Shown here piece after piece: positions 1,311-41,609 of a DNA stretch of 64,000 nt; the stretch's first letter is position 1; the number at the start of each line of letters is the position of its first letter. A model generated the notes under the pieces. The model was not told the origin of the DNA. It ran no database searches and was given only the letters and a program-made list of their open reading frames with translations. Origin of the DNA: Octopus sinensis (Eukaryota); NCBI RefSeq assembly GCF_006345805.1, contig NC_043002.1, positions 42,594,001 through 42,658,000 of the forward strand. Direction: 5' to 3'. The position numbers and the translations under genes are program-made.

Positions 1311-2034
1311 ACAATGGTTTTTAAATGTTAATTCATTTTCAGTCAAAAATGAAAACATACCCATAAACTTGTCAATTAAAGATATTCAACACCACAACAA
1401 AGGTGTATGAAATAAGATATAGAATAAAAGAAATACCTGTCTAACTTGTATAAACAAGCTATCGGACGACCTATGTAGAAAGAAAGCCGAAATAGAATAT
1501 ATTTGCATAAAAAATGCAAACAGCTTGGGTCAAGTATGTAGAACGATGGTTAGATTGATGGAAATGAGACTGAGCCGTGGAGACAGTAAAAACACTTAAC
1601 AAGAATAACGGGTCTACTCTATTATTTTTTTCGTTGACACATTTTAAGTTACATAAGTTCTATATCATTCCCCAGTTTGTTTGCTGTACATATTCAGTTT
1701 TTGTGTGAAGCTCTGTTTAACCTACCCACTTCTGTACAAAGCTGATAACTATTACAGACGCACCCACGTAAGATTGCTAAACTTATGATTACTTTTATTA
1801 TACATTTTAAGTGGAGTGTTTCTTCGCCAGAGAGCTTTGTTGTTGGTAAGAGGTATTTTCTTTTCTATCAAATATTTTTTTCTCCTGTTATTTATTGAAA
1901 TGCTGTAAATATGTATTTATATATCGTTCTGGACATTGAATTTTTCATTATCACTGTTATTGTCATAGAAAACAATACGTACAATAAATTAGCAGAATCA
2001 TTAGGTTGTCGATATAGTGCATAGTGGTATGTTA

Positions 2035-2850
2035 CGCACTGGGGTCGATGTAATCGACTTAATACCTATGTCTGTCCTTGTTTGTCCCCTCTGTGTTTGG
2101 CCCCTTGTGGGTAATAAAGAAATAGGTATTTCTGGCAGCTCTTTACATTTTGAGTTCCAATTCCGCCGTGCTAATTTTGCCTTTCATCTTTTCGTGGTTG
2201 ATAAATTAAGTACCAGTGAAACACTGGAGTCGATATAATTCACTAGTCCCCTCCCACAAAAATTCACGCCTTGGGCCTATGATTGAAAGGATTCGGCAAG
2301 CTGGCAGAATCGTTAGCACGCCTGGCGAATGCTTGGCGGTATTTCGTCCGCCGTTACGTTCTGAGTTCAAATTCCGCCAAGGTCGACTTTGCCTTTCATC
2401 CTTTCGGGGTCGATAAATTAAGTACCAGTTACACACTGGTTCGATGTAATCGACTTAATCCGTTTGTCTGTCCTTGTTTGTCCTCTCTGTGTTTAGCCCC
2501 TTGTAGGTAGTAAAGAAATAGGTATTTCATCTGCCGCTACGTTCTGAGTTCAAATTCCGCTGAGGTCGACTTTGCTTTTCATCCTTTCGGGGTCGATTAA
2601 ATAAGTACCAGTTACGCATTGGGGTCGATATAATCGACTTAATCCCTTTGTCTGTTCTTGTTTGTCCACTCTATGTTTAAAAAAAATTATTATTATTATT
2701 ATTAGATCGTCGGACAAAACGTCTGGAGATATTTGTTCTAGTTCGTTTCGTTCTGAGTTCAGATCCGACGAGGTCACCTTTGTCATTTGTTCTTCATGGA
2801 TAATAAAACAAAATACCAGTCGAGTACTGGAGGGCAATATAATCGACCAA
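2035..2850 (+). repeat. Tandem cluster (about 4-5 full/partial ~180-bp units) of a tRNA-derived SINE with a Meta/Sauria-like core
   Basis: Repeated GAGTTCAAATTCC (B-box) followed by GTCGACTTTGCCTTTCATCCTTTCGGGGTCGATAAATTAAGTACCAG at about 2150, 2365, 2545 and 2755. One A-box-bearing head at about 2295. Confidence 0.75.
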
Positions 2851-4811: not shown

Positions 4812-5300
4812 ATAGGCGTAGGCGTGGCTGGAGGTCATAGAGGAAAATTATTTCTACAGGGTGATAGATTCCTTTACTAAGGATGAATACAATTATCTCT
4901 TATGGGGCCCCGGCTTGCGACTACAGGCAGAGTAAGAGGTCTCAGTGCCTTGATTCGAACTTGGAGATTGGTAAGAGGCTCAGCGCCTCAGTTTGTAATT
5001 GTTGTAAGAGGTTCAACACCTCGTTTATGTTTTTAAAAAAGAACAATGTTACCAGAAGCAACAATTGGTGGGCGTTGGCTGCTTGCCCCACCAACCATCT
5101 CTTTTTCATTCCATCATCATCATTGTGTCTGTGTCCAGCCCGCAAAGCTTCCATCTATATTATGCCTTTATGACAAATGTAATGAAATAAAGAAGGTTGC
5201 TTCCAACCTCATGGTTCAGGGTTCAGTCTCACTTGGGCGAGTACCTTCTACTCAAGCCTCGGGCCTTGTAAGTGGATTTTGTAGACAGAAACTGAATAAA
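4812..5300 (+). mobile_element. tRNA-derived SINE (family A) whose head is split by an insertion at 4831-5189
   Basis: TAGGCGTAGGCGTGGCTG (4813-4830) resumes as AAGAAGGTTGCTTCCAACCTCATGGTTCAGGGTTCAGTC at 5190, colinear with uninterrupted copies (e.g. 25410-25862 minus). Confidence 0.8.
4831..5189 (+). mobile_element. 5'-truncated copy of an ORF1-only non-LTR element (diverged relative of 12449-14496)
   Basis: Open frame 4831-4935 (EVIEENYFYRVIDSFTKD..) aligns with the C-terminus of the 394-aa ORF1 (EVLLENDMCRIENSFPED..). The 3' ~170 nt share AAAAAAGAACAWTGTT, AGAAGCAA, GGYGGGCG, TGTCCAGCCCG and the terminus CAAAT..AATGAAATA. Confidence 0.75.
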
Positions 5301-6609: not shown

Positions 6610-8440
6610 CTGGCCACTACTTCTGATTCGCCTTGTATACACACATAAACATGTATGTATATATGTGTGTGTGTATCTTTGTGTTTGTGTTTGTCCTCCA
6701 CCACCGCTTGATGACTAGTGTTGGTGGGTTTACATCCCTGTAATTTAGCAGTTCCTCAAAAGAGATCAATTGAATAAGTGCAGAGCTTAAAAAAAAAAGT
6801 CTTGGGGTCGATTTGTTTGACTAAAACCCTTCAAGATGATGCTCCAGCATAGCCACAGTCAAATGATTGAAACTAGTGAAAGATAAAATGAAACATGGAA
6901 GTTTGAAAAATTATGCAATGTGTGTCAGTATGTGAAGGCGTATGGCCTGGTGTTGAGGCTGTTGCACTCATGATCGCTAGAATATGGGTATGATTCTTTG
7001 ATTGGACAGTGCATTGTGTTCTTGAGCAAAACACTGCATTTCACGTTGCTCCAATCCCACTTTTGATCAGTGGGGAAATGTTGGCCCGGTTGCCTAGCCA
7101 GTGGGGTGGCATCATTTGAAAGCTAAAACAATGCAAAAACACATTGTGATCAGCAATATGTAACAACATTTGACAGCCTGGTCAGTCACGTAGTTATGTG
7201 ATGTCAGTATATATTTGTGCGCACCCATCAATTTTTTCTTCTTCACATTAAATTCCAATGTAATCGTAATGTACACCATCTGAAAGGTATTTGTAGAAAA
7301 CTTCATTAAAAAAACACATTTTTTTCTGAATAACATTAGGAAACTAAATTAACTTCTGTGAATTGTCCAAAACTCCTCTCCTCTCTTCTCTGAAAAAATT
7401 TTCACAGCAAATACTGATATAATTGGAATCTACAATATCTAAATGGTATTTGCAGAAAATTGAATTAAAAGATATACAGGTGTAGGGGTGTAGTTAAGAA
7501 GCTTACTTCTCAGCCATATCATCTTGGGTTCAGTTCCTCTACTGCATAGCACCTTGGGCAACTGTCAGTCCCAGATTGACCCATCGGAATCTGAAAGATG
7601 TATATATATGTGTGTGTCTGTTTGTTACCACCCCACCACCATCACCATCAGCATCACTACTACCATCACCACTTGACAACTGATGTTGGTTTGTCTACAT
7701 TCCCATAACTTAGCGTTTCGGTTTGAGAGACTGATATAATAAGTACCAGGCTTAAGAAATAAGTACTTTCACTGATTTATTCGACTAAAACCCATCAAGG
7801 CAATGCTTCAGAGTAACCGCCGTCCAATGATTGTAAAAAAATAAAGGATGGAAGTTGTTGAGGTGTTCCTTTGTATAGGTATACCGAATAATAAAGTACT
7901 CGATATTATGTAATACCCAATAAAAGAACTAATGATTATAATTGGAATGTCTTTGATCATAGGACACCACATCTCAGATCATCAAAGATCCAAGACGTGA
8001 TAGTCTGTGCTGGCAAAAATCAGAGGGAAAAGTAAGTTCAGGTGATGCGAGAAGTTGGGTGTAGCCTTCATCGGTGAGAAAATGAGATGTAACATTTCTT
8101 ATCTTGTATCTTTTAATTGTTTCAGTTATTGGACAACAGTCATGATGACGCTGCTTTCAAGGGTTTTAGTCGAACAAATCAAAACTAGTGCTTGTTTGTT
8201 TTTAAGCCTAGTAGCTATTCTATCACTCTCTGTGGATGAACTGCTAAGTTATGGGATGTAAGCAAACCAACACGGGATGGTGGGAGGGCACAGATACACA
8301 CACATATATACGATGGGTTTCCACACTGTTTCCATCTGCCAACTTCACTCACAAGTAAATTGGTTGGCTCAGGACTATAGTAGAAGGCAATGACCTTAGG
8401 CACCACATTGAAACCAATAGTTGCGAAGCAAACTTCATAA
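6610..8440. mobile_element. Cluster of decayed SINEs: family A at ~6610-6890 (+), ~7476-7850 (+), ~8105-8440 (-); second tRNA-SINE family B at ~6935-7200 (+)
   Basis: Recognisable internal blocks (GACAACCGATGCTGGTG-like, GGGGTCGATTTG..GACTAAAA, CCAGCATGGCC..CAGTC) and tRNA-like heads. Confidence 0.7.
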
Positions 8441-8602
8441 CCACACAGATATACCTTTTGTGATTTTTCTTGGGAGAAAATTTGCTTAGATGAGATGCAG
8501 TTCAGTTTTGTGCTCAGTAGAAGCACCACTGATGCTATATTCCTGGTTTGACAACTGCAGGAGAAATACCTAGCTAAAGATAAACCCCTCTACATAGCTT
8601 TT

Positions 8603-9277
8603 GTGGACTTGGAGAAAGCCTTTGACAGGGTTCTCCGATCCCTTATCTGGTGGTCGATGTGGAAACTGGAGATTGACAAATGGCTAATAAGGGCTGTACA
8701 GGCCCTATACAGAGAGGCTGTCAGCAAGGTTAGGGTTGGCAATGAGTATAGTGAAGAATTCCGGGTAGAAGTAGGTGTACACCAAGGTTCAGCCCTCAGT
8801 CCCCTTTTATTCATCATAGTCCTCCAGGCAATAACAGAGGAATTCAAAACAGGATGCCCCTGGGAGTTCCTCTATGCTGATGACCTGGCTCTCATAGCAG
8901 AATCACTACCGGAACTAGAAAAGAAATTTCGGGTGTGGAAGCAAGGTTTAGAATCAAAGGGCCTTAGAGTAAATGTAGCAAAGACCAAGGTTATAGTAAG
9001 CAGAAAGGCAAACTCATCACACACACCCTCGGGCAGGTGGCCCTGCTCGATCTGTAGGAAAGGTGTAGGTAGAAACTCCATAAGATGTACCCAGTGTAAG
9101 CTATGGATGCATAAGAGGTGCAGCAACATCAAAGGGAAATTAACTGATAAGATAGCTTTCATGTGCGGCAGATGCACAGGGACAATAGACACCACAGATA
9201 CTCAGAAAACAGATTCCATCACCCTCCAGGGGGAGAAACTAGAAGTAGTTGATAGTTTCCGCTACCTAGGTGACTAA
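8603..9277 (+). pseudogene. RTE reverse transcriptase fragment (ORF2)
   Basis: ORF-track protein with YADD motif and a Cys-rich segment (CSICRKG..CTQC..C..C). Confidence 0.9.
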
Positions 9278-12064: not shown

Positions 12065-12448
12065 TCTCTTTCTCTTTTACTCTTTTACTTGTTTCAGTCA
12101 TTTGACTGCGGCCATGCTGGAGCACCGCCTTTAGTCGAGCAACTCGACCCCGGGACTTATTCTTTTTTTGTAAGCCCAGTACTTATTCTATCGGTCTCTT
12201 TTTGCCGAACCGCTAAGTAACGGGGACGTAAACACACCAGCATCGGTTGTCAAGCAATGCTAGGGGGACAAACACAGACACACAAACAAACACACATACA
12301 TATATATATATATATACATATATACGACAGGCTTCTTTCAGTTTCCGTCTACCAAATCCACTCACAAGGCTATAGCAGAAGACACTTGCCCAAGGTACCA
12401 CGCAGTGGGACTGAACCCGGAACCATGTGGTTGGTTAGCAAGCTACTT
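12065..12448 (-). mobile_element. tRNA-derived SINE family A, body and 3' part (5' head displaced to 14497-14537)
   Basis: Near-consensus, CpG-intact copy that stops at AGCTACTT. The missing head ACCACACAGCCACTCCTGCGCCTAT is at 14513-14537. Confidence 0.9.
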
Positions 12449-14496
12449 TATTTCATTTAATTTGCCACAAGGGCAGCACAAAGAGTAGCTACGGGCTGGA
12501 CAAGGACATTAATGGATGATGGTGGTGATTGATGAATATGGTGATGGGAGAAGTCAGAAAGCGCCCGCCGACTTTTGCTTCTCTAAAACAATGTTCTTTT
12601 TTTTTCCAATAAATTACAAAATTTTCAAAAATTACAAAAATTTCAAAAAATTTTCACAAAAATTTCAATTAACAGTTTACACTTTTGAAAGTCTCTTCAG
12701 AGGCAATAAACCTCTGTCACAATGTAACACAATTACAATTTTACGTTACCCGACCGATGAACTCTCTTGCTTTAATGACGCAATCGTCCATCGTCAGGCT
12801 TCCGCATACAGGTATGACTTGCAAGAGATCCTCCGGGAAAGAATTCTCGATCCTGCACATATCATTTTCGAGTAGGACCTCCGCAGCCAGCTGCGAAGGC
12901 CACTCGGGATACTCCATGCAGGACTGAAGTCCCTCCCATTCGTTTCTCTTCCTCCTCTTACGTATTTCATTTTCTATAGTGCCTCCTTTATGGAAGAGGA
13001 CTACATAAAATTTCTCCGGCATCACAATCGCCGGAGGACACATGGGAGATGCCCTCTGGGTGTTACAGTCCGCTGGTGGCGTCCCGTTCCTCTTTTTGTT
13101 TTTCTTTTTACGCTGGGCCTCGGGAGGTTGAGGTTCCGGTGCTATACGCACCGGGTCCTCTTTTTCTTCCGCAGCCTCCGGTTCCTTTTGTGGGTCGCCA
13201 TTGCTCCCCACTCTTCTTTTTCTTTTGGAGGAGGATTTTTCCCCCTCATTTTGTTTCTCTCCCTCCATTGGTGGGGCAGGGAGAGGCTCTGATATTAACT
13301 TCTCCAGGATCCTACTCTGGTTCCTGGGGCAGTTTTTCTTAATGTGGCCGGTCTCCGAACACAGGTGACACTTGGGGGCGCGTCCCTCAAGCATCACCAG
13401 ATACTTGGACCCGGCCATCTTCAGGAAGTCCGGCAAAACCAGACTCTTGGCCGACTGGGTCCACAGAGTCAAAGTAGCCTTTGCCCCTTCCCAGTTAGCC
13501 GCAGGCTGCATTCTCACGTTTAGGATCTTGGCGCTACCACCACTCAGACCCCGGCGGATGGAATCTTCCACCCACTCGGGCTCAAAGCCGGGCGGCAGGC
13601 CGCAGACCCATAAACGTATCAATTTTTCCCCCTTATAGCTTGGGAGAAACAGAATCTCTTCGCCCTCAATGAGTTTACTCGCGAAATCGCAAGCTGCTTT
13701 AGGGGAGTCAAACAGCAACCAAATCGTTGCGTATTTGGCTCCCCGTTGAATATGTTTAACGGCTGGCATATAGTCTGCCAGCTCGTTCATAATTGTGTCT
13801 TTCGGAAAGACCATTATGGTGTCGAGTGACTTCGAAAATGTCCTCAGCACCACTGTCTTTTCCTCAAGTTCGTTCAAATATTTTTTGGGAGGTGTTAATT
13901 CCCACACTGTGAAATTCCTTGCCATAACTTAAGAAAAACAGTTCAAAATGTTACAAAATAAATTAGACACAGAAAGGAGAATGAAAAAAAGCAACAGAAG
14001 GGAAGAAATAAAATTAAAATGGCAGTTCAAAGAAAGTTCTTTTTTTTTTACAAATGAATGATAGACGGAGAAAGAGAGTTCAAATCAGACAAAGGAATTA
14101 ATATTTTTTTTTTTTTTTTTTTTGTTCACTTTTTCGGCCAAAAATTGTATTCCAGGCCAAGTATATGGTTGGTACAACACCTTGGTAAATAATCCTTGGT
14201 AAATCCGTGGATGACACAACGACAATTTCAAAAATGATTTTTGTAGACGGACTACGCCGCCTCAAAAAACACAATATTCTTCACACCCGACAACAGGCAG
14301 AAAAATTATATCCGGAGCAAAGTGGAGCCTTATTATCTGCTAAAAAAATATTTAATGCTAAAAAACATTAATGCAAGTAATAAAACTTCACTTCGCTCGC
14401 AAAAATACAAAATGCCTACCTGCAATCGAGTCGAAAGTTCAACAATTCACGTTCAAACACGTGACATTTGCCGGAGCAAAAAACAACACGTCTGTC
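12449..14496 (-). mobile_element. Full-length ~2.05-kb ORF1-only (HAL1-like) L1/Tx1-type non-autonomous retroposon with ~17-bp TSD
   Basis: TSD TGGTTAGCAAGCTACTT (12432-12448) versus TGGTAAGAAGCTACTT (14497-14512). About 570-nt 5' UTR, a 394-aa ORF1, about 290-nt 3' UTR ending AATTAAATGAAATA. No endonuclease or RT coding. Confidence 0.85.
12741..13925 (-). CDS. Non-LTR ORF1 (gag-like) protein, 394 aa: RRM-like region, CCHC zinc knuckle, basic linker
   Basis: Intact ORF. CHLCSETGHIKKNC matches C-x2-C-x4-H-x4-C. RNP-like YATIWLLFDSP and IRLWVCGLPP. Basic KRKRR and RKKKNKKR. Layout resembles Tx1/L1 ORF1 and ZCCHC3-type proteins. Confidence 0.85.
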   Translation of the reverse strand: MARNFTVWELTPPKKYLNELEEKTVVLRTFSKSLDTIMVFPKDTIMNELADYMPAVKHIQRGAKYATIWLLFDSPKAACDFASKLIEGEEILFLPSYKGEKLIRLWVCGLPPGFEPEWVEDSIRRGLSGGSAKILNVRMQPAANWEGAKATLTLWTQSAKSLVLPDFLKMAGSKYLVMLEGRAPKCHLCSETGHIKKNCPRNQSRILEKLISEPLPAPPMEGEKQNEGEKSSSKRKRRVGSNGDPQKEPEAAEEKEDPVRIAPEPQPPEAQRKKKNKKRNGTPPADCNTQRASPMCPPAIVMPEKFYVVLFHKGGTIENEIRKRRKRNEWEGLQSCMEYPEWPSQLAAEVLLENDMCRIENSFPEDLLQVIPVCGSLTMDDCVIKAREFIGRVT

Positions 14497-14537
14497 TGGT
14501 AAGAAGCTACTTACCACACAGCCACTCCTGCGCCTAT
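14497..14537 (-). mobile_element. 5' head (A-box) of the SINE split by the 12449-14496 insertion
   Basis: Minus strand reads ATAGGCGCAGGAGTGGCTGTGTGGTAAGTAGCTTCTTACCA. Confidence 0.88.
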
Positions 14538-14639: not shown

Positions 14640-15400
14640 TGCATGTGTATTCTTTTATGCGTTTCACCCCAAACCTTGTCAACATGTTGGGGTACCACCA
14701 GTGCCATTACCTCTTCACTTGCTATTCTCATTTGGTTGGCTTTTGGTGGAGGAGCGAGTTTGATATTGCTGTGATGTAGATTCATCTGGGATCTTGGATG
14801 GCCATAGATCAAAGTGCTTCTTAAAAACATCCACCCACATTCCATGTAGATCTCTCAGTTTTTTTTGGTTTTTCTTTTTTGAGACAATATTAAATAGCTG
14901 TGGGCCTTTGAATCCCAAGCTATTGCAGTACCTGGTCCTTATTCTAGATGGGATAGGTGGGACCTTTGGAATAGTGCATTGGTGTTCTGTTCAGAGGCTG
15001 GTATAACTCGTGATGCCAAACTAAGTTCCTCTAACATATTCCATTTGTATATCACCATATATCTCTCCTCTTTTCACTCTAGGGAGTAGAGTCGTAATTC
15101 TTTCTGTGACTCAAGTGTTTCATTGAACAAATTTTCTTGGTTTAACACCACTGAACTGCCTTGAATCCCACCATTAATTTCTTGCTGTAGACGACTATAA
15201 TTGAGAGCAGTAGTTCAGACAGTAGAGGATAAATGTCTTCCATAGAACCAACGTTGTTTCCTGGTCCCTTGTTCTGAAAGTTCTCAGAATCTATTCAGCC
15301 ATTTGCCTGCATATTGCCACCATTTTGGTGATGTGTGCATGAAATGAACATACATACATAGCCATTTAGTACTATTTTATCCTTTTGTTAGGATTGTCAG
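14640..15400 (-). mobile_element. Degraded CR1-clade LINE 3' fragment
   Basis: Minus-strand peptides ILRTFRTRDQETTLVLWKTF..NYCSQL and KGPQLFNI..LRDLH..VDVFKKH.D..SKIPDE. Confidence 0.7.
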
Positions 15401-27104: not shown

Positions 27105-29303
27105 TCATCATCATCATCATCGTCGTCGTCGTCATCATTGTCATTTAATATCCGCTTTCCATGCTGTTATGGGTTGGATGATTTGAGTGAGGGTTGGTGA
27201 GCCAGAAGGCTGCACCTGGTTCCTATCCGATTCTGGCAATGTTTCTATAGCTGGATGCCCTACCTAGCACCAACCACTCTGAGAGTGTAGTGGGTGCTTT
27301 TTACATGCCACAAGCATGAGGCCGGTCAAGCGCTACTGGCATCGGCCATGCTTGGATGGTGCTTTTTACATGCCACCAGGACAAGAGCCAGTCAGGCAGC
27401 ACTGGCAACAACCATGCTCAAATGGTGCTTTTTACATGCCACTGGCATAGGTACCAATCAGGTGGTACTGTCATCGGCCATGACAATGACTTCACTTGCC
27501 TCAACAGGTCTTCGCAAGCGCAGTTTATTGCCCAATGATTGAAGGGTACTCTTAAATGGGCTTGTTATGCTGCACTGGCATAGGCCATGGTTACAGTCTC
27601 ACTTGGCTTCCCAGGTGTTCTCAAGCACAGCATATCTCCAAAGGTCTTGGTCACCAAAGGTCATGCTTCAGCACCTCATCCCAGGTTTTCCTGGGTCTGC
27701 GTCTTCCACAGGTTCCCTCTACTGCTAGAGTGTGACACTTTTTCACACAGCTATCCTCATCCATATGCAACACATGACCATACCAGTGCAGTCATCTCTC
27801 TTGCACACCACATCTGATGCTTCTTAGATCCAACTTTTCTCTCAGGGCACTTACACTCTGTCGTTTATGCACACTGAAATTACACACCCAGCAAAGCATA
27901 CTAGCTTCATTCCTTGCAAGCTTATGCATGTCCTCAGCAATCATGCACATGTGTCACTGCCATGTAGCATGGCTGTTCGCACACATGCATCATACAGTCT
28001 ACCTTTTACTCTGAGTGAGAGGCCCTTTATCACCAGCAGAAGCTGGAGCTCTCTGAACTTTGCCCAGACTATTCTTATTCTAGCAGCTACACTTTCAGCA
28101 CACCCACTCCTGCTACTGATCTGGTCACCTAGGTAATGGAAGCTATCAACTACTTCTAGTTTTTCTCCCTGGAATGTGGCGGAAGTTGTTCTCTGCACAT
28201 TTTCAGTGTTTATTGCTCCTGAGCATCTGCCACATACAAAAACAATCTTCCCAGTTAGCCTTCCTTGCTGCACCTCTTATGTGTCCATTGCGTACACTGA
28301 GTACATCTTATAGAGTTTCTACGTATGCCTTTTCTACAGATCGAGCAGGGCCATCTACCTGAAGGGATTTGTGGTTTGCCTGCCTTCCTACTTATTAGAA
28401 CTTTGGTTTTAGCTTGGTTGACTCTAAGGCCTTTCAATTCTAATCCTTGTTTCCACACTTGAAACTTCTCTACTTCTGATAGTGACTCAGCAATTAGAGC
28501 AAAGTCGTCAGCATAGAGGAGCATCCTGTCTTGAATTCTTTTGTTATTGCCTAGAGGACTATGATAAATAGGAGGGGGCTGAGGACTGAGCCTTGGTGGA
28601 CCCCTACCTCTACCCGGAATTCTTCACTGTACTTGTTGCCAACCCTCACCTTACTGACAGCATCCCTGTACACGGCTTGCACAGCTCTCACTAAGCATTC
28701 ATCTATCCCTAATTTCCTCATTGACCACCAGATGAGGGATCGGGGGACCCTGTGAAAGTCTTTTTCCATGTCAACGAAAGACAGGTACAGAGGTTTATCT
28801 TTGGCTAGGTATTTCTCCTGCAGCTGTCTTACCAGAAATATAGCATCAGTGGTGCTTTTCCCTGGTACTAACCCAAACTGCATCTCATCTAAACTGACTC
28901 TCTCCCTAATTAGTTGGGCTATGACCCTCTTCGTGACCTTCATTACCTGATCCAACAACTTGATACCTCTGTAATTATTTGTATCTATAGTGTCACCTTT
29001 ACCTTTGTAGCAGTTAAATATTATGCTGCTACACCAGTCATTGGATTTGACTCCTTCGTGTATCACCTGGTTAACTATATAGGTGACTAGGCTATAGCTG
29101 ACACTACCAGATATTTTGAGCATCTCTGCAGTAATTCCTGATGGGCCGGGGGCTTTCTCTATCTTCATACTCTTAATTGCTTTATCTACCAAGGTACTGT
29201 CAACTAGGATAGCTAGTCCCTCTGTTGAGTCAACAGCCCATAGGTGGTACTTCCATATGCACTTAAAACAATTGGGAAAGCATGCAACATATGACCAAGT
29301 CAT
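27105..29303 (-). mobile_element. 5'-truncated RTE LINE, older copy of the 8480-10355 family
   Basis: KAPGPSGITAEML, NYRGIKLLDQVMKV, QFGLVPGKSTTDAIF, GVHQGSVLSPLLF, LYADD. (CAT)n tail at ~27105-27140. Confidence 0.9.
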
Positions 29304-40200: not shown

Positions 40201-41609
40201 ACAGCGACTTCAAAGTTTTTGCCTGATAAGCCATTGCCAAATACCACAGTCTGACAATATCTTAGCAGGCTGAACTTCAAAGTCATTACTATTCTTGTTA
40301 AAGAATAATATATATATATATATATATATAGGGATGGTATTATTAAAATACCATCACAAGTGGTAAGCGAATTATCAGCCATACAGGCAACTTAATAAAA
40401 TATATACATACAATATTAGATATGTACATATATACACAAGGGTACTACATGAGTACCTATATCGCTAATGATAGAAGACAAAAAATACTATATATATATA
40501 TATATATCACCATCATCATTTAGTATCTGCTTTCTATGCTGGCATGTGTTAAACGATTTGATTGGAACTGGCAAGTGGGGAAGCTGCACCAAGTTCCAGT
40601 CTGATTTGGCATGGTTTCTATGGTTGGATGCCCTTCCTAACACCTATATATTTCATGAATTATGAATTGAAGTCATACCCTAATATTGTGGTGTGGAACT
40701 ACAAGTTAATGTTGGATATACAGGAGCAGATATGAATTCTTTACATTTTAACAATATTACCCATGATGAAGAGTATCTGGCAGTTGATGCAGAATAATAA
40801 TAATAATGAAATTATTCTTCCTTACCCTAGTGCTGAAAAAATACCAATAAACCAGTTTTTATATCTTAATATTTTAGCCTTCAATGAGTTCAATAAAAAG
40901 TGATGGTGCTCACTTCATATTCTCTTATTTAGGCAAAGACTAGAAGAATGCAATGAGTGGAATGAATATGTTGGTTGCCTTAAGCATTTAAATTAGCCAT
41001 ATCTGGCCAAAATAGTCAACCTGTTCTATACCCAAATCGCCCAGATCTGGCCTTTCACGCCTACCTTGCAATATCATTCTAAAATTAAACAATCACATCA
41101 CTGAAATGTCAAAGCTATGAGATAATGTGAGAGTAATTTAAAACAACGAGATTAAATAAGCATTACATTTGACAGAGTAATATGGATGCTAAAAGGTTAA
41201 CAGGTATACACACACACAACTTAGAACTCAGAGAAAAATACTTGAAAATTTTCATGTTCAGTGTGAATGTATCTTAACTACTAACCTGAAAGTTTCATCC
41301 AAGAAAAGCAAGTCAGCTTGACAGGAACATACTATTAATTTGAACAAAATTATGTCACACAGGTCAGATGCTGCCTGCAGTTGCAAGCTTGTCACCCAAT
41401 GATACCTAGACAGATCAGGCCAGTAAAGATATATGTTTCATGGCTATAGACGCAACACAGCATAAGCTGCAGGTAATGAACGTGAAGTTTTTTTGCATAG
41501 CAGTTGAATGCTATGCTGATTAGCAGATGGAGTTTCCCAAATTCATAGACACCTAATAAGCAGTATTGTAGATATGAAAATTCACTTTTGAAGTTAATCT
41601 AATTCACTG

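What the first reader, a model, noticed from the sequence alone, without database searches (positions are those of the whole stretch)
4812..5200. Second, diverged copy inserted at the identical nucleotide of the same SINE family: a SINE/tRNA-targeting retroposon system
Seen: at both loci the element ends ..AATGAAATA and is followed immediately by AAG(T/A)AG(C/G)TTGCT, in the same orientation as the SINE. The site is the 3' edge of the A-box (TGGCTGTGTGGT|AAG). This copy is 5'-truncated, with a ~6-nt target deletion in place of a TSD. It retains 34 open codons homologous to the ORF1 C-terminus (EVxxENxxxRxxxSFxxD) and the same 3' UTR motifs despite clear divergence. So the ORF1-then-tail architecture is a family trait, and two independent insertions hit one position within 10 kb. 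Established: Tx1-clade LINEs (Keno, Dewa, Koshi, Kibi) are sequence-specific for multicopy targets. Inference: a site-specific family that uses an abundant SINE, or its parent tRNA, as a safe-haven target, separating A-box from B-box and so probably silencing the SINE. I do not know of this being described in cephalopods, but cannot search.
Basis: partly seen in the sequence, partly recalled or inferred. Interest (0 to 1): 0.9.

Follow-up and report, generated by a model that had tools for sequence, protein, structure and literature searches.

The report
SINE-targeting ORF1-only retroposon in octopus
A small jumping gene that encodes only an RNA-binding protein has inserted again and again at one exact nucleotide of an abundant octopus SINE, so it is a site-specific parasite of another parasite, related to known target-specific LINEs but with a new target and a stripped-down build.

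Summary
Window 4831-5189 (+) is a 5'-truncated, diverged copy of the 2055-bp element at 14503-12449 (-). Both end in AATGAAATA and are followed at once by AAGWAG.TTGCT of a SINE, in the SINE's orientation, one base after its A-box.

I found three more copies in two other octopus species. An O. bimaculoides copy turned up by chance in unrelated flanking DNA and has the same 3' junction. Two O. sinensis copies have their 5' junction in the same SINE segment.

The host SINEs belong to different SINE subfamilies. SINE heads are 80-85% identical, while the adjacent element 5' UTRs are 54-69% identical and ORF1 dS is 0.8-1.25. These are therefore independent insertions, not one amplified chimera.

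The element encodes ORF1 only: two RRM-like domains plus a CCHC knuckle, with dN/dS 0.22-0.31. Its ORF1 and a 3'-terminal hairpin (GCCCTTGTGGC.AATAAA) are shared with full-length octopod LINEs of the L1/Tx1 group. The best reading is a HAL1-like non-autonomous retroposon mobilised in trans and inserted at SINE position T|AAG.

No ORF2 partner was found, and Tx1 membership and tRNA-gene targeting are untested. It is a new variant of a known kind.

The parts
4815..4830 (+). Head of the host SINE at locus 2. It is a subfamily-B type (GGCGTAGGCGTGGCTG) and is cut 6 nt short of the usual break, with TGTGGT missing.
   Evidence: alignment with 13 uninterrupted SINE copies.
4831..5189 (+). Element copy W2, 5'-truncated, 359 bp. 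The ORF1 C-terminal remnant is 4831-4932, the stop codon 4933-4935 and the 3' UTR 4936-5189. The UTR holds three GAGGY-loop-RCCTC hairpin units and a G/C-rich hairpin, and ends ..GCCTTTATGACAAATGTAATGAAATA.
5190..5296 (+). Rest of the host SINE at locus 2. It resumes exactly at AAGAAGGTTGCTTCC and carries the B-box-like GGTTCAGTCTC at 5220-5230.
14504..14535 (-). Head of the host SINE at locus 1. It is a subfamily-A type (AGGCGCAGGAGTGGCTGTGTGGTAAGTAGCTT). Its last 9 nt (14512-14504) are the upstream copy of the target-site duplication.
12449..14503 (-). Element copy W1, full length, 2055 bp. The 5' UTR is 14503-13926, the intact ORF1 is 13925-12741 (394 aa) and the 3' UTR is 12740-12449. There is no ORF2.
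12290..12448 (-). Rest of the host SINE at locus 1. It resumes at AAGTAGCTTGCTAACC, and the downstream TSD copy is 12448-12440. SINE-like sequence continues past the TA/TG microsatellite to at least about 12200.
12449..12482 (-). 3'-terminal motif CTCTTTGTGCTGCCCTTGTGGCAAATTAAATGAAATA, with a small hairpin (TGCC/GGCA stem, CTTGT loop). The motif is shared with full-length octopod LINEs and with a second SINE family. The equivalent stretch in W2 is 5155-5189.

Best explanation
The element is a non-autonomous, ORF1-only non-LTR retroposon, built like mammalian HAL1. It descends from an octopod LINE group of the L1/Tx1 superclade.

Proposed mechanism (steps marked shown or inferred).
- Its RNA is coated by its own ORF1 protein, which has two RRM-like domains plus a CCHC knuckle (inferred).
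- The RNA is copied by the ORF2 protein of a related autonomous LINE, which recognises the shared 3'-terminal hairpin/AAUAAA tail (inferred).
[quoted passage not shown] Insertion is always in the SINE's orientation (junction and orientation shown; nick inferred).
- Second-strand cleavage varies. It gives a 6-nt deletion in W2, a duplication of about 3 bp at an AAG microhomology in the O. bimaculoides copy, and a 9-17 bp duplication (AAGWAGCTT(GCTTCC)) in full-length copies (shown).
- 5' truncation is common (shown).
- The conserved head of the SINE acts as a multicopy, constantly renewed, harmless landing site (inferred). Each insertion separates the A and B boxes and so probably inactivates that SINE copy (inferred).

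Also shown: independent insertions, the ORF1-only build, purifying selection on ORF1, and homology of ORF1 and of the tail to L1/Tx1-like LINEs. Also inferred: trans-mobilisation, and the specificity residing in a partner endonuclease.
For: Five copies lie at one SINE site in three assemblies.
- W1 and W2 are in the window.
- L009 (O. bimaculoides) was found by chance in the flank of an unrelated look-up. Its 3' junction is identical..AATGAAATA|AAGTAGCTTGCT, and the SINE head lies directly upstream.
- L001 and L003 (O. sinensis) were found by ORF1 homology alone. Both have the SINE head ..GTGGTAAGWAGYTTGCTTCC directly before the element's 5' end.
- All five lie in the SINE's orientation, with unrelated outer flanks.

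The insertions are independent.
- Host SINEs fall in different subfamilies, with diagnostic bases on both sides of the insert. The W1 and L009 hosts are GGAGTGG/AAGTAGCTTGCTWAYC. The W2 and L003 hosts are GGCGTGG/AAGAAG.TTGCTTCC. These match uninterrupted copies.
- SINE heads are 80-85% identical, against 54-69% for the adjacent 5' UTRs.
- ORF1 dS between copies is 0.8-1.25.

TPRT hallmarks are present: a target-site duplication, 5' truncations with microhomology, and no LTR or TIR.

The ORF1-only build is ancestral. In W1, W2 and L003 the ORF1 stop is followed by homologous UTR motifs. ORF1 dN/dS is 0.22-0.31.

ORF1 protein. The model has pLDDT 76.7, and its top fold matches are tandem-RRM proteins at probability 1.0. 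The CCHC hit has E = 0.0011.

Relatives.
- ORF1 is homologous at 22-31% identity (tblastn E 1e-15 to 1e-22) to ORF1 of octopod elements that include full LINEs.
- Those LINEs carry an ORF2 with APE + RVT_1 + zf-RVT, which matches human L1 ORF2p at E = 2e-71.
- The 3'-terminal motif GCCCTTGTGGC.AATAAA is conserved in all of them, and one stem pair shows G-C to C-G covariation.
- Some relatives also look target-bound. One sits inside (ATT)n on both sides. One ORF1-only relative sits inside a second SINE family with an 18-bp duplication.
Against: - No ORF2-bearing partner sitting in this SINE was found, so the source of the specificity is not shown.
- Only five copies were examined, and a genome-wide flank logo could not be built with these tools.
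- The two O. sinensis copies lack their 3' ends and the SINE tail. The breaks lie at microsatellite-like sequence, and neither the element tail nor the SINE tail is detectable downstream (10 kb examined in L001, 29 kb in L003). This is unexplained.
- In W1 the segment after AAGTAGCTT (CTTACCA) differs from the downstream copy (GCTAACCA). The duplication length is therefore ambiguous, between 9 and 17 bp.
- Whole 3' UTRs do not fold better than shuffles (z = 0.30 and -0.60).
- The CCHC hit is just below Pfam's cut-off (19.4 bits against 20.8).
- Rfam and ARAGORN do not recognise the SINE as tRNA-like.
Confidence: 0.72

Rival explanations
1. The insertions are site-specific, but the specificity is carried by the element itself and not by a dedicated partner endonuclease. 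In one version, transcripts read through into the downstream SINE, and that 3' extension base-pairs with a nicked or breathing SINE copy to prime reverse transcription, giving a self-perpetuating memory of the target. In another version, the ORF1 protein guides the RNP to SINE DNA or RNA. The ORF2 protein would be a generic one borrowed from the same LINE group.
For: - An AATAAA signal straddles the 3' junction in W1, W2 and L009 (GAAATA|AAG). Cleavage would then fall 10-30 nt into the SINE, within the segment that becomes the duplication.
- No SINE-resident ORF2-bearing copy was seen in 270 kb.
- Two ORF1-only families, only 29% identical in ORF1, sit in two different SINEs. The three autonomous relatives examined do not.
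- ORF1 has stayed under purifying selection through deep divergence.
- A second SINE shares the tail yet is dispersed. At least one ORF2 protein of this group is therefore not SINE-A-specific.
Against: - Only three autonomous relatives were sampled, so a missing partner means little.
- In studied target-specific APE LINEs, specificity is set mainly by the endonuclease, as stated in PMC4494074.
- Read-through transcripts are not shown.
- An invariant nick position is most simply explained by a sequence-specific nuclease.
Confidence: 0.17
2. There was a single ancestral insertion into one SINE. The SINE-plus-insert chimera was then amplified as a unit, so the shared junction is inherited and not re-created each time.
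For: - The junction sequence is the same in every copy, and the element is always flanked by SINE parts.
- The W1 and W2 SINE tails are only about 75% identical, not far from the 68% of the element tails.
Against: - Host SINE halves match different uninterrupted SINE subfamilies on both sides of the insert.
- Heads are 80-85% identical while ORF1 dS is 0.8-1.25 and the 5' UTRs are 54-69% identical.
- The truncated copies W2 and L009 keep an upstream SINE head, with a different 5' junction in each copy (a 6-nt deletion in W2, AAG microhomology in L009). This fits a fresh 5'-truncated insertion, not internal deletion of a chimera.
- A 2.2-kb chimera has no obvious means of mobilisation through the SINE's tail.
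Confidence: 0.04
3. The insert spreads among SINE copies by gene conversion or ectopic recombination between SINEs, not by retrotransposition.
For: SINE copies give abundant homology on both sides of the insert.
Against: - Conversion would copy the donor's junctions unchanged. Instead the copies have different 5' junctions, different truncation points and different duplication lengths.
- Host SINE flanks keep their own subfamily bases right up to the junction.
- ORF1 is under purifying selection.
Confidence: 0.03
4. This is chance, or a weak hotspot. The endonuclease likes a short motif such as GGT|AAG, and the SINE is simply its commonest carrier.
For: The SINE is very abundant. SINEs make up 11.6% of the O. 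vulgaris genome (PMC13282606).
Against: - A 6-nt motif occurs about once per 4 kb outside SINEs, yet five of five copies are in the SINE.
- The chance of repeated exact hits is about 1e-9 by my estimate.
Confidence: 0.02

Closest known systems
Tx1L in Xenopus laevis (inserted in the piggyBac-type transposon Tx1D), and crocodilian Tx1-Mar families (inserted in Mariner-N4_AMi; other Tx1 families in Harbinger and LTR elements) - PMC4494074
   Same: - APE-type non-LTR retroposons that insert at defined positions, in a fixed orientation, inside another multicopy transposable element.
- Non-autonomous passengers (SINEU) share the target preference of the autonomous family.
- The relatives typed here are in the same L1/Tx1 superclade, with APE + RT + zf-RVT.
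   Different: - Here the target is a SINE, a class absent from the target lists in the papers I could read.
- The element has no ORF2 at all.
- The 3' junction is exact to the nucleotide in three of three copies, whereas Tx1-Mar has 'preferred regions'.
- Tx1 clade membership by RT phylogeny is untested.
HAL1 (half-L1) of mammals - PMC5753468, which cites Smit 1999 and Bao & Jurka 2010
   Same: A non-autonomous LINE derivative that keeps only ORF1 and is presumably mobilised by the ORF2 protein of autonomous relatives. Here the ORF1-only build is shared by deeply diverged copies, and ORF1 dN/dS is 0.22-0.31.
   Different: - HAL1 derives from mammalian L1, has poly(A)-type ends and inserts without site specificity.
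- The ORF1 protein here is the RRM + CCHC type, not the coiled-coil/RRM/CTD type of mammalian L1 (the latter from my own knowledge).
- The 3' end here is a specific hairpin tail without poly(A).
Kibi, Koshi and crocodilian Tx1 group 2 (microsatellite-specific); Keno (U2 snRNA); Mutsu (5S rRNA); Dewa (spacer of tRNA-Leu arrays) - PMC4494074, PMC3706591
   Same: Target-specific Tx1-clade LINEs that use multicopy sequences as safe havens. One octopod relative found here (L002) is flanked by (ATT)n on both sides.
   Different: Their targets are host RNA genes, spacers or simple repeats, not a retroposon. All of them are autonomous two-ORF elements.
Dada DNA transposons (inserted inside tRNA, U1 and U6 genes) - PMC3706591
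   Same: Insertion at one fixed position inside a small Pol III- or snRNA-type multicopy sequence.
   Different: They are DDE-transposase DNA transposons with 6-7 bp duplications. The mechanism is unrelated.
Stringent-type LINE/SINE pairs that share a 3' tail (for example the zebrafish and eel L2-type LINEs in PMC4176376)
   Same: A conserved 3'-terminal stem-loop is shared by autonomous LINEs, an ORF1-only derivative and a SINE family. This fits tail recognition by the reverse transcriptase.
   Different: Recognition is not tested here. The hairpin is only 4 bp, and the clade is different.

Membership tests
Target-specific non-LTR retrotransposons of the Tx1 clade | ORF2 with an APE endonuclease and an RT that groups with Tx1 in an RT phylogeny | not testable with these tools
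   None of the five copies has an ORF2. Distant ORF1 relatives have APE + RVT_1 + zf-RVT, and their best solved-structure match is human L1 ORF2p at E = 2e-71. That places them in the L1/Tx1 superclade only. No Tx1 reference sequences were available, and database names did not help.
Target-specific non-LTR retrotransposons of the Tx1 clade | Copies inserted at the same position and in the same orientation in a repeated target sequence | tested here: met
   The 3' junction ..GAAATA|AAGWAG.TTGCT is present in three of three copies that have a 3' end. The 5' junction lies in the same SINE segment in three of three full-length 5' ends. All are in the SINE's orientation, across three species.
Target-specific non-LTR retrotransposons of the Tx1 clade | TPRT hallmarks: target-site duplication or small deletion, frequent 5' truncation, no terminal repeats | tested here: met
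   W1 has the duplication AAGTAGCTT(+). W2 is 5'-truncated with a 6-nt target deletion. L009 is 5'-truncated with AAG microhomology.
Target-specific non-LTR retrotransposons of the Tx1 clade | ORF1 protein of the RRM + CCHC zinc-knuckle type | tested here: met
   The AlphaFold model has pLDDT 76.7, and residues of about 14-180 form two RRM-like folds. Foldseek top hits are the tandem-RRM proteins hnRNPA2B1, IMP3 and UP1 at probability 1.0. The CCHC match at 185-200 has E = 0.0011, just below Pfam's cut-off. The cysteines are nearly invariant in a 20-sequence alignment.
HAL1-like ORF1-only non-autonomous LINE derivatives | Encodes ORF1 but no ORF2; the ORF1 stop is followed directly by the 3' UTR and tail | tested here: met
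   W1 is 2055 bp with one 394-aa ORF. The same junction of ORF1 stop to UTR motif is present in W2 and L003.
HAL1-like ORF1-only non-autonomous LINE derivatives | Derived from, and sharing its 3' end with, an autonomous LINE lineage | tested here: inconclusive
   ORF1 homology and the 3'-terminal motif GCCCTTGTGGC.AATAAA are shared with full-length LINEs in O. vulgaris, O. sinensis and Argonauta. The actual partner, with a near-identical tail and the same target, was not found.
HAL1-like ORF1-only non-autonomous LINE derivatives | Descent from mammalian L1 (HAL1 in the strict sense) | tested here: not met
   It is a cephalopod element with an RRM + CCHC ORF1 and a non-poly(A) tail. It is an analogue of HAL1, not a member.
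tRNA-derived SINE (the target) | tRNA-like head with A and B boxes | tested here: inconclusive
   A-box-like TGGCTGTGTGG and B-box-like GGTTCAGTCCC are conserved in 13 uninterrupted copies. However, ARAGORN and Rfam give no tRNA call.

The most novel reading that the evidence does not exclude
Octopods may harbour a guild of ORF1-only retroposons that are obligate hyperparasites of SINEs. At least two deeply diverged families each home to a fixed site in the conserved head of a different SINE family. In this reading they carry their own target specificity, through read-through target sequence at the RNA 3' end or through the ORF1 protein, while borrowing a generic reverse transcriptase. That would be a way of inheriting site specificity without an endonuclease of one's own.
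Probability: 0.15. Interest if true: 0.85.

Novelty: new variant of a known kind. Interest (0 to 1): 0.62.

Why it matters
Target-specific LINEs are studied for two reasons. They show how selfish elements avoid harming the host, and they are templates for programmable DNA insertion.

This case adds a SINE as the safe-haven target. New SINE copies keep renewing that target, and each hit probably disables one SINE copy. It is therefore a three-level system of LINE machinery, ORF1-only passenger and SINE host.

It also shows that a lineage with no endonuclease or reverse transcriptase of its own has kept nucleotide-exact targeting through deep divergence (ORF1 dS about 1). That makes a direct question testable: where does the specificity reside, in a partner endonuclease, in RNA-target pairing or in the ORF1 protein?

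On the practical side, such composites can be misread as chimeric or unknown repeats in cephalopod repeat libraries.

Tried and rejected
- Default-scored blastn of W1 against the window missed W2. Relaxed scoring and Smith-Waterman alignment with shuffles were needed.
- Two searches of the large protein database, one with ORF1 and one with a three-sequence family profile, returned only two family members, both from O. sinensis. No exact product of W1 is on record. More copies could therefore not be gathered this way.
- The third protein search, with the ORF2 of a distant relative, gave no informative names to separate Tx1 from L1.
- Rfam (gathering thresholds on the window, E-value mode on an intact SINE) and ARAGORN gave no tRNA or other RNA family.
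- Whole-3'-UTR folding is no better than shuffles. Only short local hairpins recur.
- I looked for the missing 3' ends and SINE tails of the O. sinensis copies L001 and L003 and found none downstream.
- I considered that the SINE tail might be the element's own tail, as in a LINE-SINE tail relationship. I rejected this because a SINE head precedes every copy and W1 has a duplication of SINE sequence.
- I considered a segmental duplication of W1 and W2. I rejected it because the outer flanks are unrelated, the orientations are opposite, the tails are 68% identical and the host SINE subfamilies differ.
- I considered that the element might end in ..AAATAAAG, which would put the nick 3 nt further on. 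I disfavour this because related tails end ..AAAGAAAT(A/G/C).
- Literature searches found no description of a SINE-targeting LINE or of this family in cephalopods within the searchable library. Repbase and Dfam could not be consulted.
Full report
**Observation**

The finding's coordinates hold a real structure. A SINE head (GGCGTAGGCGTGGCTG) lies at 4815-4830. A 359-bp insert lies at 4831-5189 and ends ..TGTAATGAAATA. The same SINE resumes at 5190 with AAGAAGGTTGCTTCCAACC.., and six SINE bases (TGTGGT) are missing at the 5' junction.

The first locus lies on the minus strand. Its SINE head is at 14535->14504 and a 2055-bp element is at 14503->12449, ending ..TTAAATGAAATA. The SINE resumes at 12448 with AAGTAGCTTGCTAACC. 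AAGTAGCTT is present at both ends as a target-site duplication.

The two inserts are homologous.
- Over the last ~200 nt they are 68% identical, with a local score of 117 against 24.8 +/- 3.5 for shuffles.
- The 34 open codons at 4831-4932 align collinearly with ORF1 residues 349-366 of the full copy. The DNA score is 36 against 20.9 +/- 3.1, reached by 0 of 500 shuffles. The protein score is reached by 10 of 1000 shuffles.

An alignment of 13 uninterrupted copies of the SINE shows that the break lies one base after the A-box-like TGGCTGTGTGG and upstream of the B-box-like GGTTCAGTCCC.

**More copies elsewhere**

The 394-aa ORF (13925-12741) has only two close relatives among the proteins searched, both from Octopus sinensis. 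I fetched their loci.
- In both, the element's 5' end is directly preceded by the same SINE head..GGCATGGCTGTGTGGTAAGTAGCTTGCTTCC|TGTGCATGCG in L001 and ..GGCGTTGCCGTGTGGTAAGAAGTTTGCTTCC|ACTGCGCATG in L003.
- These two copies were chosen by protein similarity alone, so their SINE context is an unbiased test.

A fifth copy turned up by chance in O. bimaculoides DNA that I fetched for an unrelated protein (L009). There, the SINE head AGGCGCAGGAGTGGCTGTGTGGTAAG is followed by a 5'-truncated tail of about 139 bp, 78% identical to W1. The tail ends ..AAAATGAAATA and is followed by AAGTAGCTTGCTTATCAACC.. of the SINE.

The tally is as follows.
- All three copies that have a 3' end share the junction to the nucleotide.
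- All five lie in the SINE's orientation.
- The outer flanks are unrelated.
- In 270 kb of sampled octopod DNA, about 13 such SINE sites are empty and 5 are filled.
- A random insertion would hit that nucleotide and orientation with probability of about 3e-5 (my estimate).

**Independent insertions or one amplified chimera?**

Three lines of evidence argue for independent insertions into different SINE copies.
- The SINE has at least two subfamilies, recognisable in uninterrupted copies. Type A reads GGAGTGG..AAGTAGCTTGYTWACC and type B reads GGCGTGG..AAGAAGCTTGCTTCYC. The hosts of W1 and L009 are type A on both sides of the insert. The hosts of W2 and L003 are type B.
- The SINE heads in front of W1, L001 and L003 are 80-85% identical. 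The 5' UTRs that follow them are 54-69% identical.
- ORF1 synonymous divergence between these copies is 0.8-1.25.

The truncated copies also keep a SINE head, with a different 5' junction in each (a 6-nt deletion in W2, AAG microhomology in L009). That is what fresh 5'-truncated insertions give, not what internal deletions of a chimera would give.

**What the element is**

It encodes ORF1 only. In W1, W2 and L003 the ORF1 stop codon is followed by homologous UTR motifs, including a GAGGY-loop-RCCTC hairpin (three units in W2), and then by the tail. Loss of ORF2 therefore predates the divergence of these copies.

ORF1 dN/dS between copies is 0.22-0.31, so the protein has been kept by selection.

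A structure model (pLDDT 76.7) shows two RRM-like domains, the CCHC knuckle, a disordered basic linker and a small C-terminal domain. Its best fold matches are tandem-RRM proteins. The Pfam zf-CCHC hit is just under the cut-off.

A full HMMER scan found 68 relatives, most at about 25% identity. Those with names are cephalopod proteins. Their loci show what they are.
- In O. vulgaris (L004) and Argonauta (L005), the ORF1 homologue is followed by an ORF2 with APE endonuclease, reverse transcriptase and a zf-RVT domain. In O. sinensis (L002) the downstream ORFs show only Exo_endo_phos and zf-RVT hits, with no RVT_1 call.
- The O. vulgaris ORF2 matches human L1 ORF2p at E = 2e-71.
- This places the group in the L1/Tx1 superclade. 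I could not separate L1 from Tx1.
- L1-Tx1 is the only L1-type class listed among recently active O. vulgaris LINEs (PMC13282606).

**Shared tail**

All these elements end in one conserved motif.
- W1: ..CTCTTTGTGCTGCCCTTGTGGCAAATTAAATGAAATA
- L004: ..CTCTTTGTTGGCCCCTTGTGGGTAAATAAAATAAAA
- L005: ..GTTTGTGTGCCCTTGTGGCGAATAAAGAAATG
- L002..GTGTGTCAGCCCTTGTGGCCAATAAAAAG..

Nine of the ten occurrences of CCCTTGTGG in 201 kb are such tails. They include the ends of a second, unrelated SINE family at window 2102 and L003 40378.

The motif forms a 4-bp hairpin with a CTTGT loop. One stem pair changes from G-C to C-G across families.

I infer that this is the handle by which the group's reverse transcriptase picks its templates, and that the ORF1-only element is mobilised in trans through it.

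**Mechanism**

I propose target-primed reverse transcription that starts at an invariant bottom-strand nick, 5'-CTT|ACC-3' (top strand GGT|AAG). Second-strand cleavage is variable.
- W2: -6 nt.
- L009: about +3.
- Full-length copies: +9 to +17. In W1 the stretch after AAGTAGCTT reads CTTACCA upstream and GCTAACCA downstream, so I cannot say whether it is duplication or the element's own 5' end.

The simplest source of the specificity is the endonuclease of an autonomous partner, as in other target-specific APE LINEs (PMC4494074). No such partner was found.

A rival remains open. An AATAAA signal straddles the junction (GAAATA|AAG). Transcripts may therefore end inside the SINE and carry target sequence that pairs with the next target. 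Alternatively, the ORF1 protein may contribute to targeting.

The idea that splitting the A and B boxes silences the hit SINE copy is an inference.

**Parallels found on the way**

- In O. sinensis (L010), a different ORF1-only element (ORF1 29% identical, same type of tail) sits inside the second SINE family. Its site is ..GAGCTGGC|AGAAAYGTTAGCACGCCG|GGCG.., with an 18-bp duplication and the same orientation as the SINE. Five other heads of that SINE are empty. One copy cannot prove specificity.
- The O. sinensis LINE in L002 has (ATT)n on both sides.
- The O. vulgaris LINE in L004 forms a head-to-tail array of three copies, separated by a 9-nt spacer that resembles the upstream flank.
- Target-bound insertion therefore looks common in this group, as it is in the Tx1 clade.

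**Comparison with known systems, and novelty**

The closest known systems are Tx1L in Tx1D and the crocodilian Tx1-Mar families in Mariner-N4_AMi, with their SINEU passengers (PMC4494074). For the architecture, the closest is mammalian HAL1 (PMC5753468).

The new points are:
- a SINE as the target;
- nucleotide-exact targeting by a lineage that has no enzyme of its own;
- the long persistence of that lineage.

I found no description of it in the searchable literature. Repbase and Dfam could not be checked, and an abundant family like this may already sit in repeat libraries under an uninformative name.

**Caveats**

- Only five copies were examined.
- The two O. sinensis copies have lost their 3' parts and the SINE tail, and I cannot explain this.
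- Tx1 membership and tRNA-gene targeting are untested.
- Rfam and ARAGORN do not call the SINE tRNA-like.
- Whole-UTR folds are unremarkable.

Noticed in passing
L010:7440-9065 (O. sinensis CM016880.1): A different ORF1-only element (ORF1 7576-8729, 29% identical to the window's ORF1; tail ..CCCTTTATGGATAAATAAAGAAATC) lies inside a second SINE family. It has an 18-bp duplication, AGAAA[C/T]GTTAGCACGCCG, and the same orientation as that SINE. This may be a parallel SINE-targeting family.
   Followed up: partly
window:~1990-2127 (+), a further head at ~2290; L003:~40353-40570 (-): A second SINE family (head ..GCTGGCAGAATCGTTAGCACGCC..) ends in the same tail as the LINE group: ..TTTGTCCCCTCTGTGTTTRGCCCCTTGTGGGTARTAAAGAAATA. 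It is probably mobilised by that group.
   Followed up: partly
L004:4446-20000 (O. vulgaris OX597840.1): Three head-to-tail copies of a full-length L1/Tx1-like LINE with a period of about 5.28 kb, 98-100% identical over most of their length. They are separated by a 9-nt spacer (CACTGATAA / CACCCGATA) that resembles the upstream flank ACCCGACA. This could be repeated insertion at one site or a tandem duplication.
   Followed up: partly
L002:9716-9780 and 15343-15390 (O. sinensis CM016872.1): A LINE of the same group is flanked by (ATT)n on both sides, which suggests microsatellite-specific insertion as in Kibi and Koshi.
   Followed up: partly
L006:5200-7990 (O. vulgaris OX597819.1): Another ORF1-only relative (31% identity), with frameshifts. 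It is enclosed in an inverted duplication of about 700 bp that includes an inverted copy of its own tail.
   Followed up: no
L001:~10975 and L003:~17760: Both O. sinensis copies of the SINE-targeting family break off at microsatellite-like sequence, (CA/TA)n in L001 and (GT)19 in L003. Both lack the element tail and the SINE tail downstream. The cause is unknown.
   Followed up: partly
window:8603-9277 (+) and 28551-29303 (-): Two reverse-transcriptase ORF fragments (RVT_1, E = 2e-18 and 1e-16). The first is followed by a PHD-finger-like stretch. They come from other retroelements and are not part of this finding.
   Followed up: no
window:19531-20100 (+): A 189-aa ORF with weak immunoglobulin-domain hits (Ig_3 at E = 7e-6). 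It may be an exon of a host gene.
   Followed up: no
window:4519-4545 (+): A short telomere-like run, C9-TAACCCTAACTCTAACCCTAAAAC, about 270 nt upstream of the SINE at locus 2.
   Followed up: no
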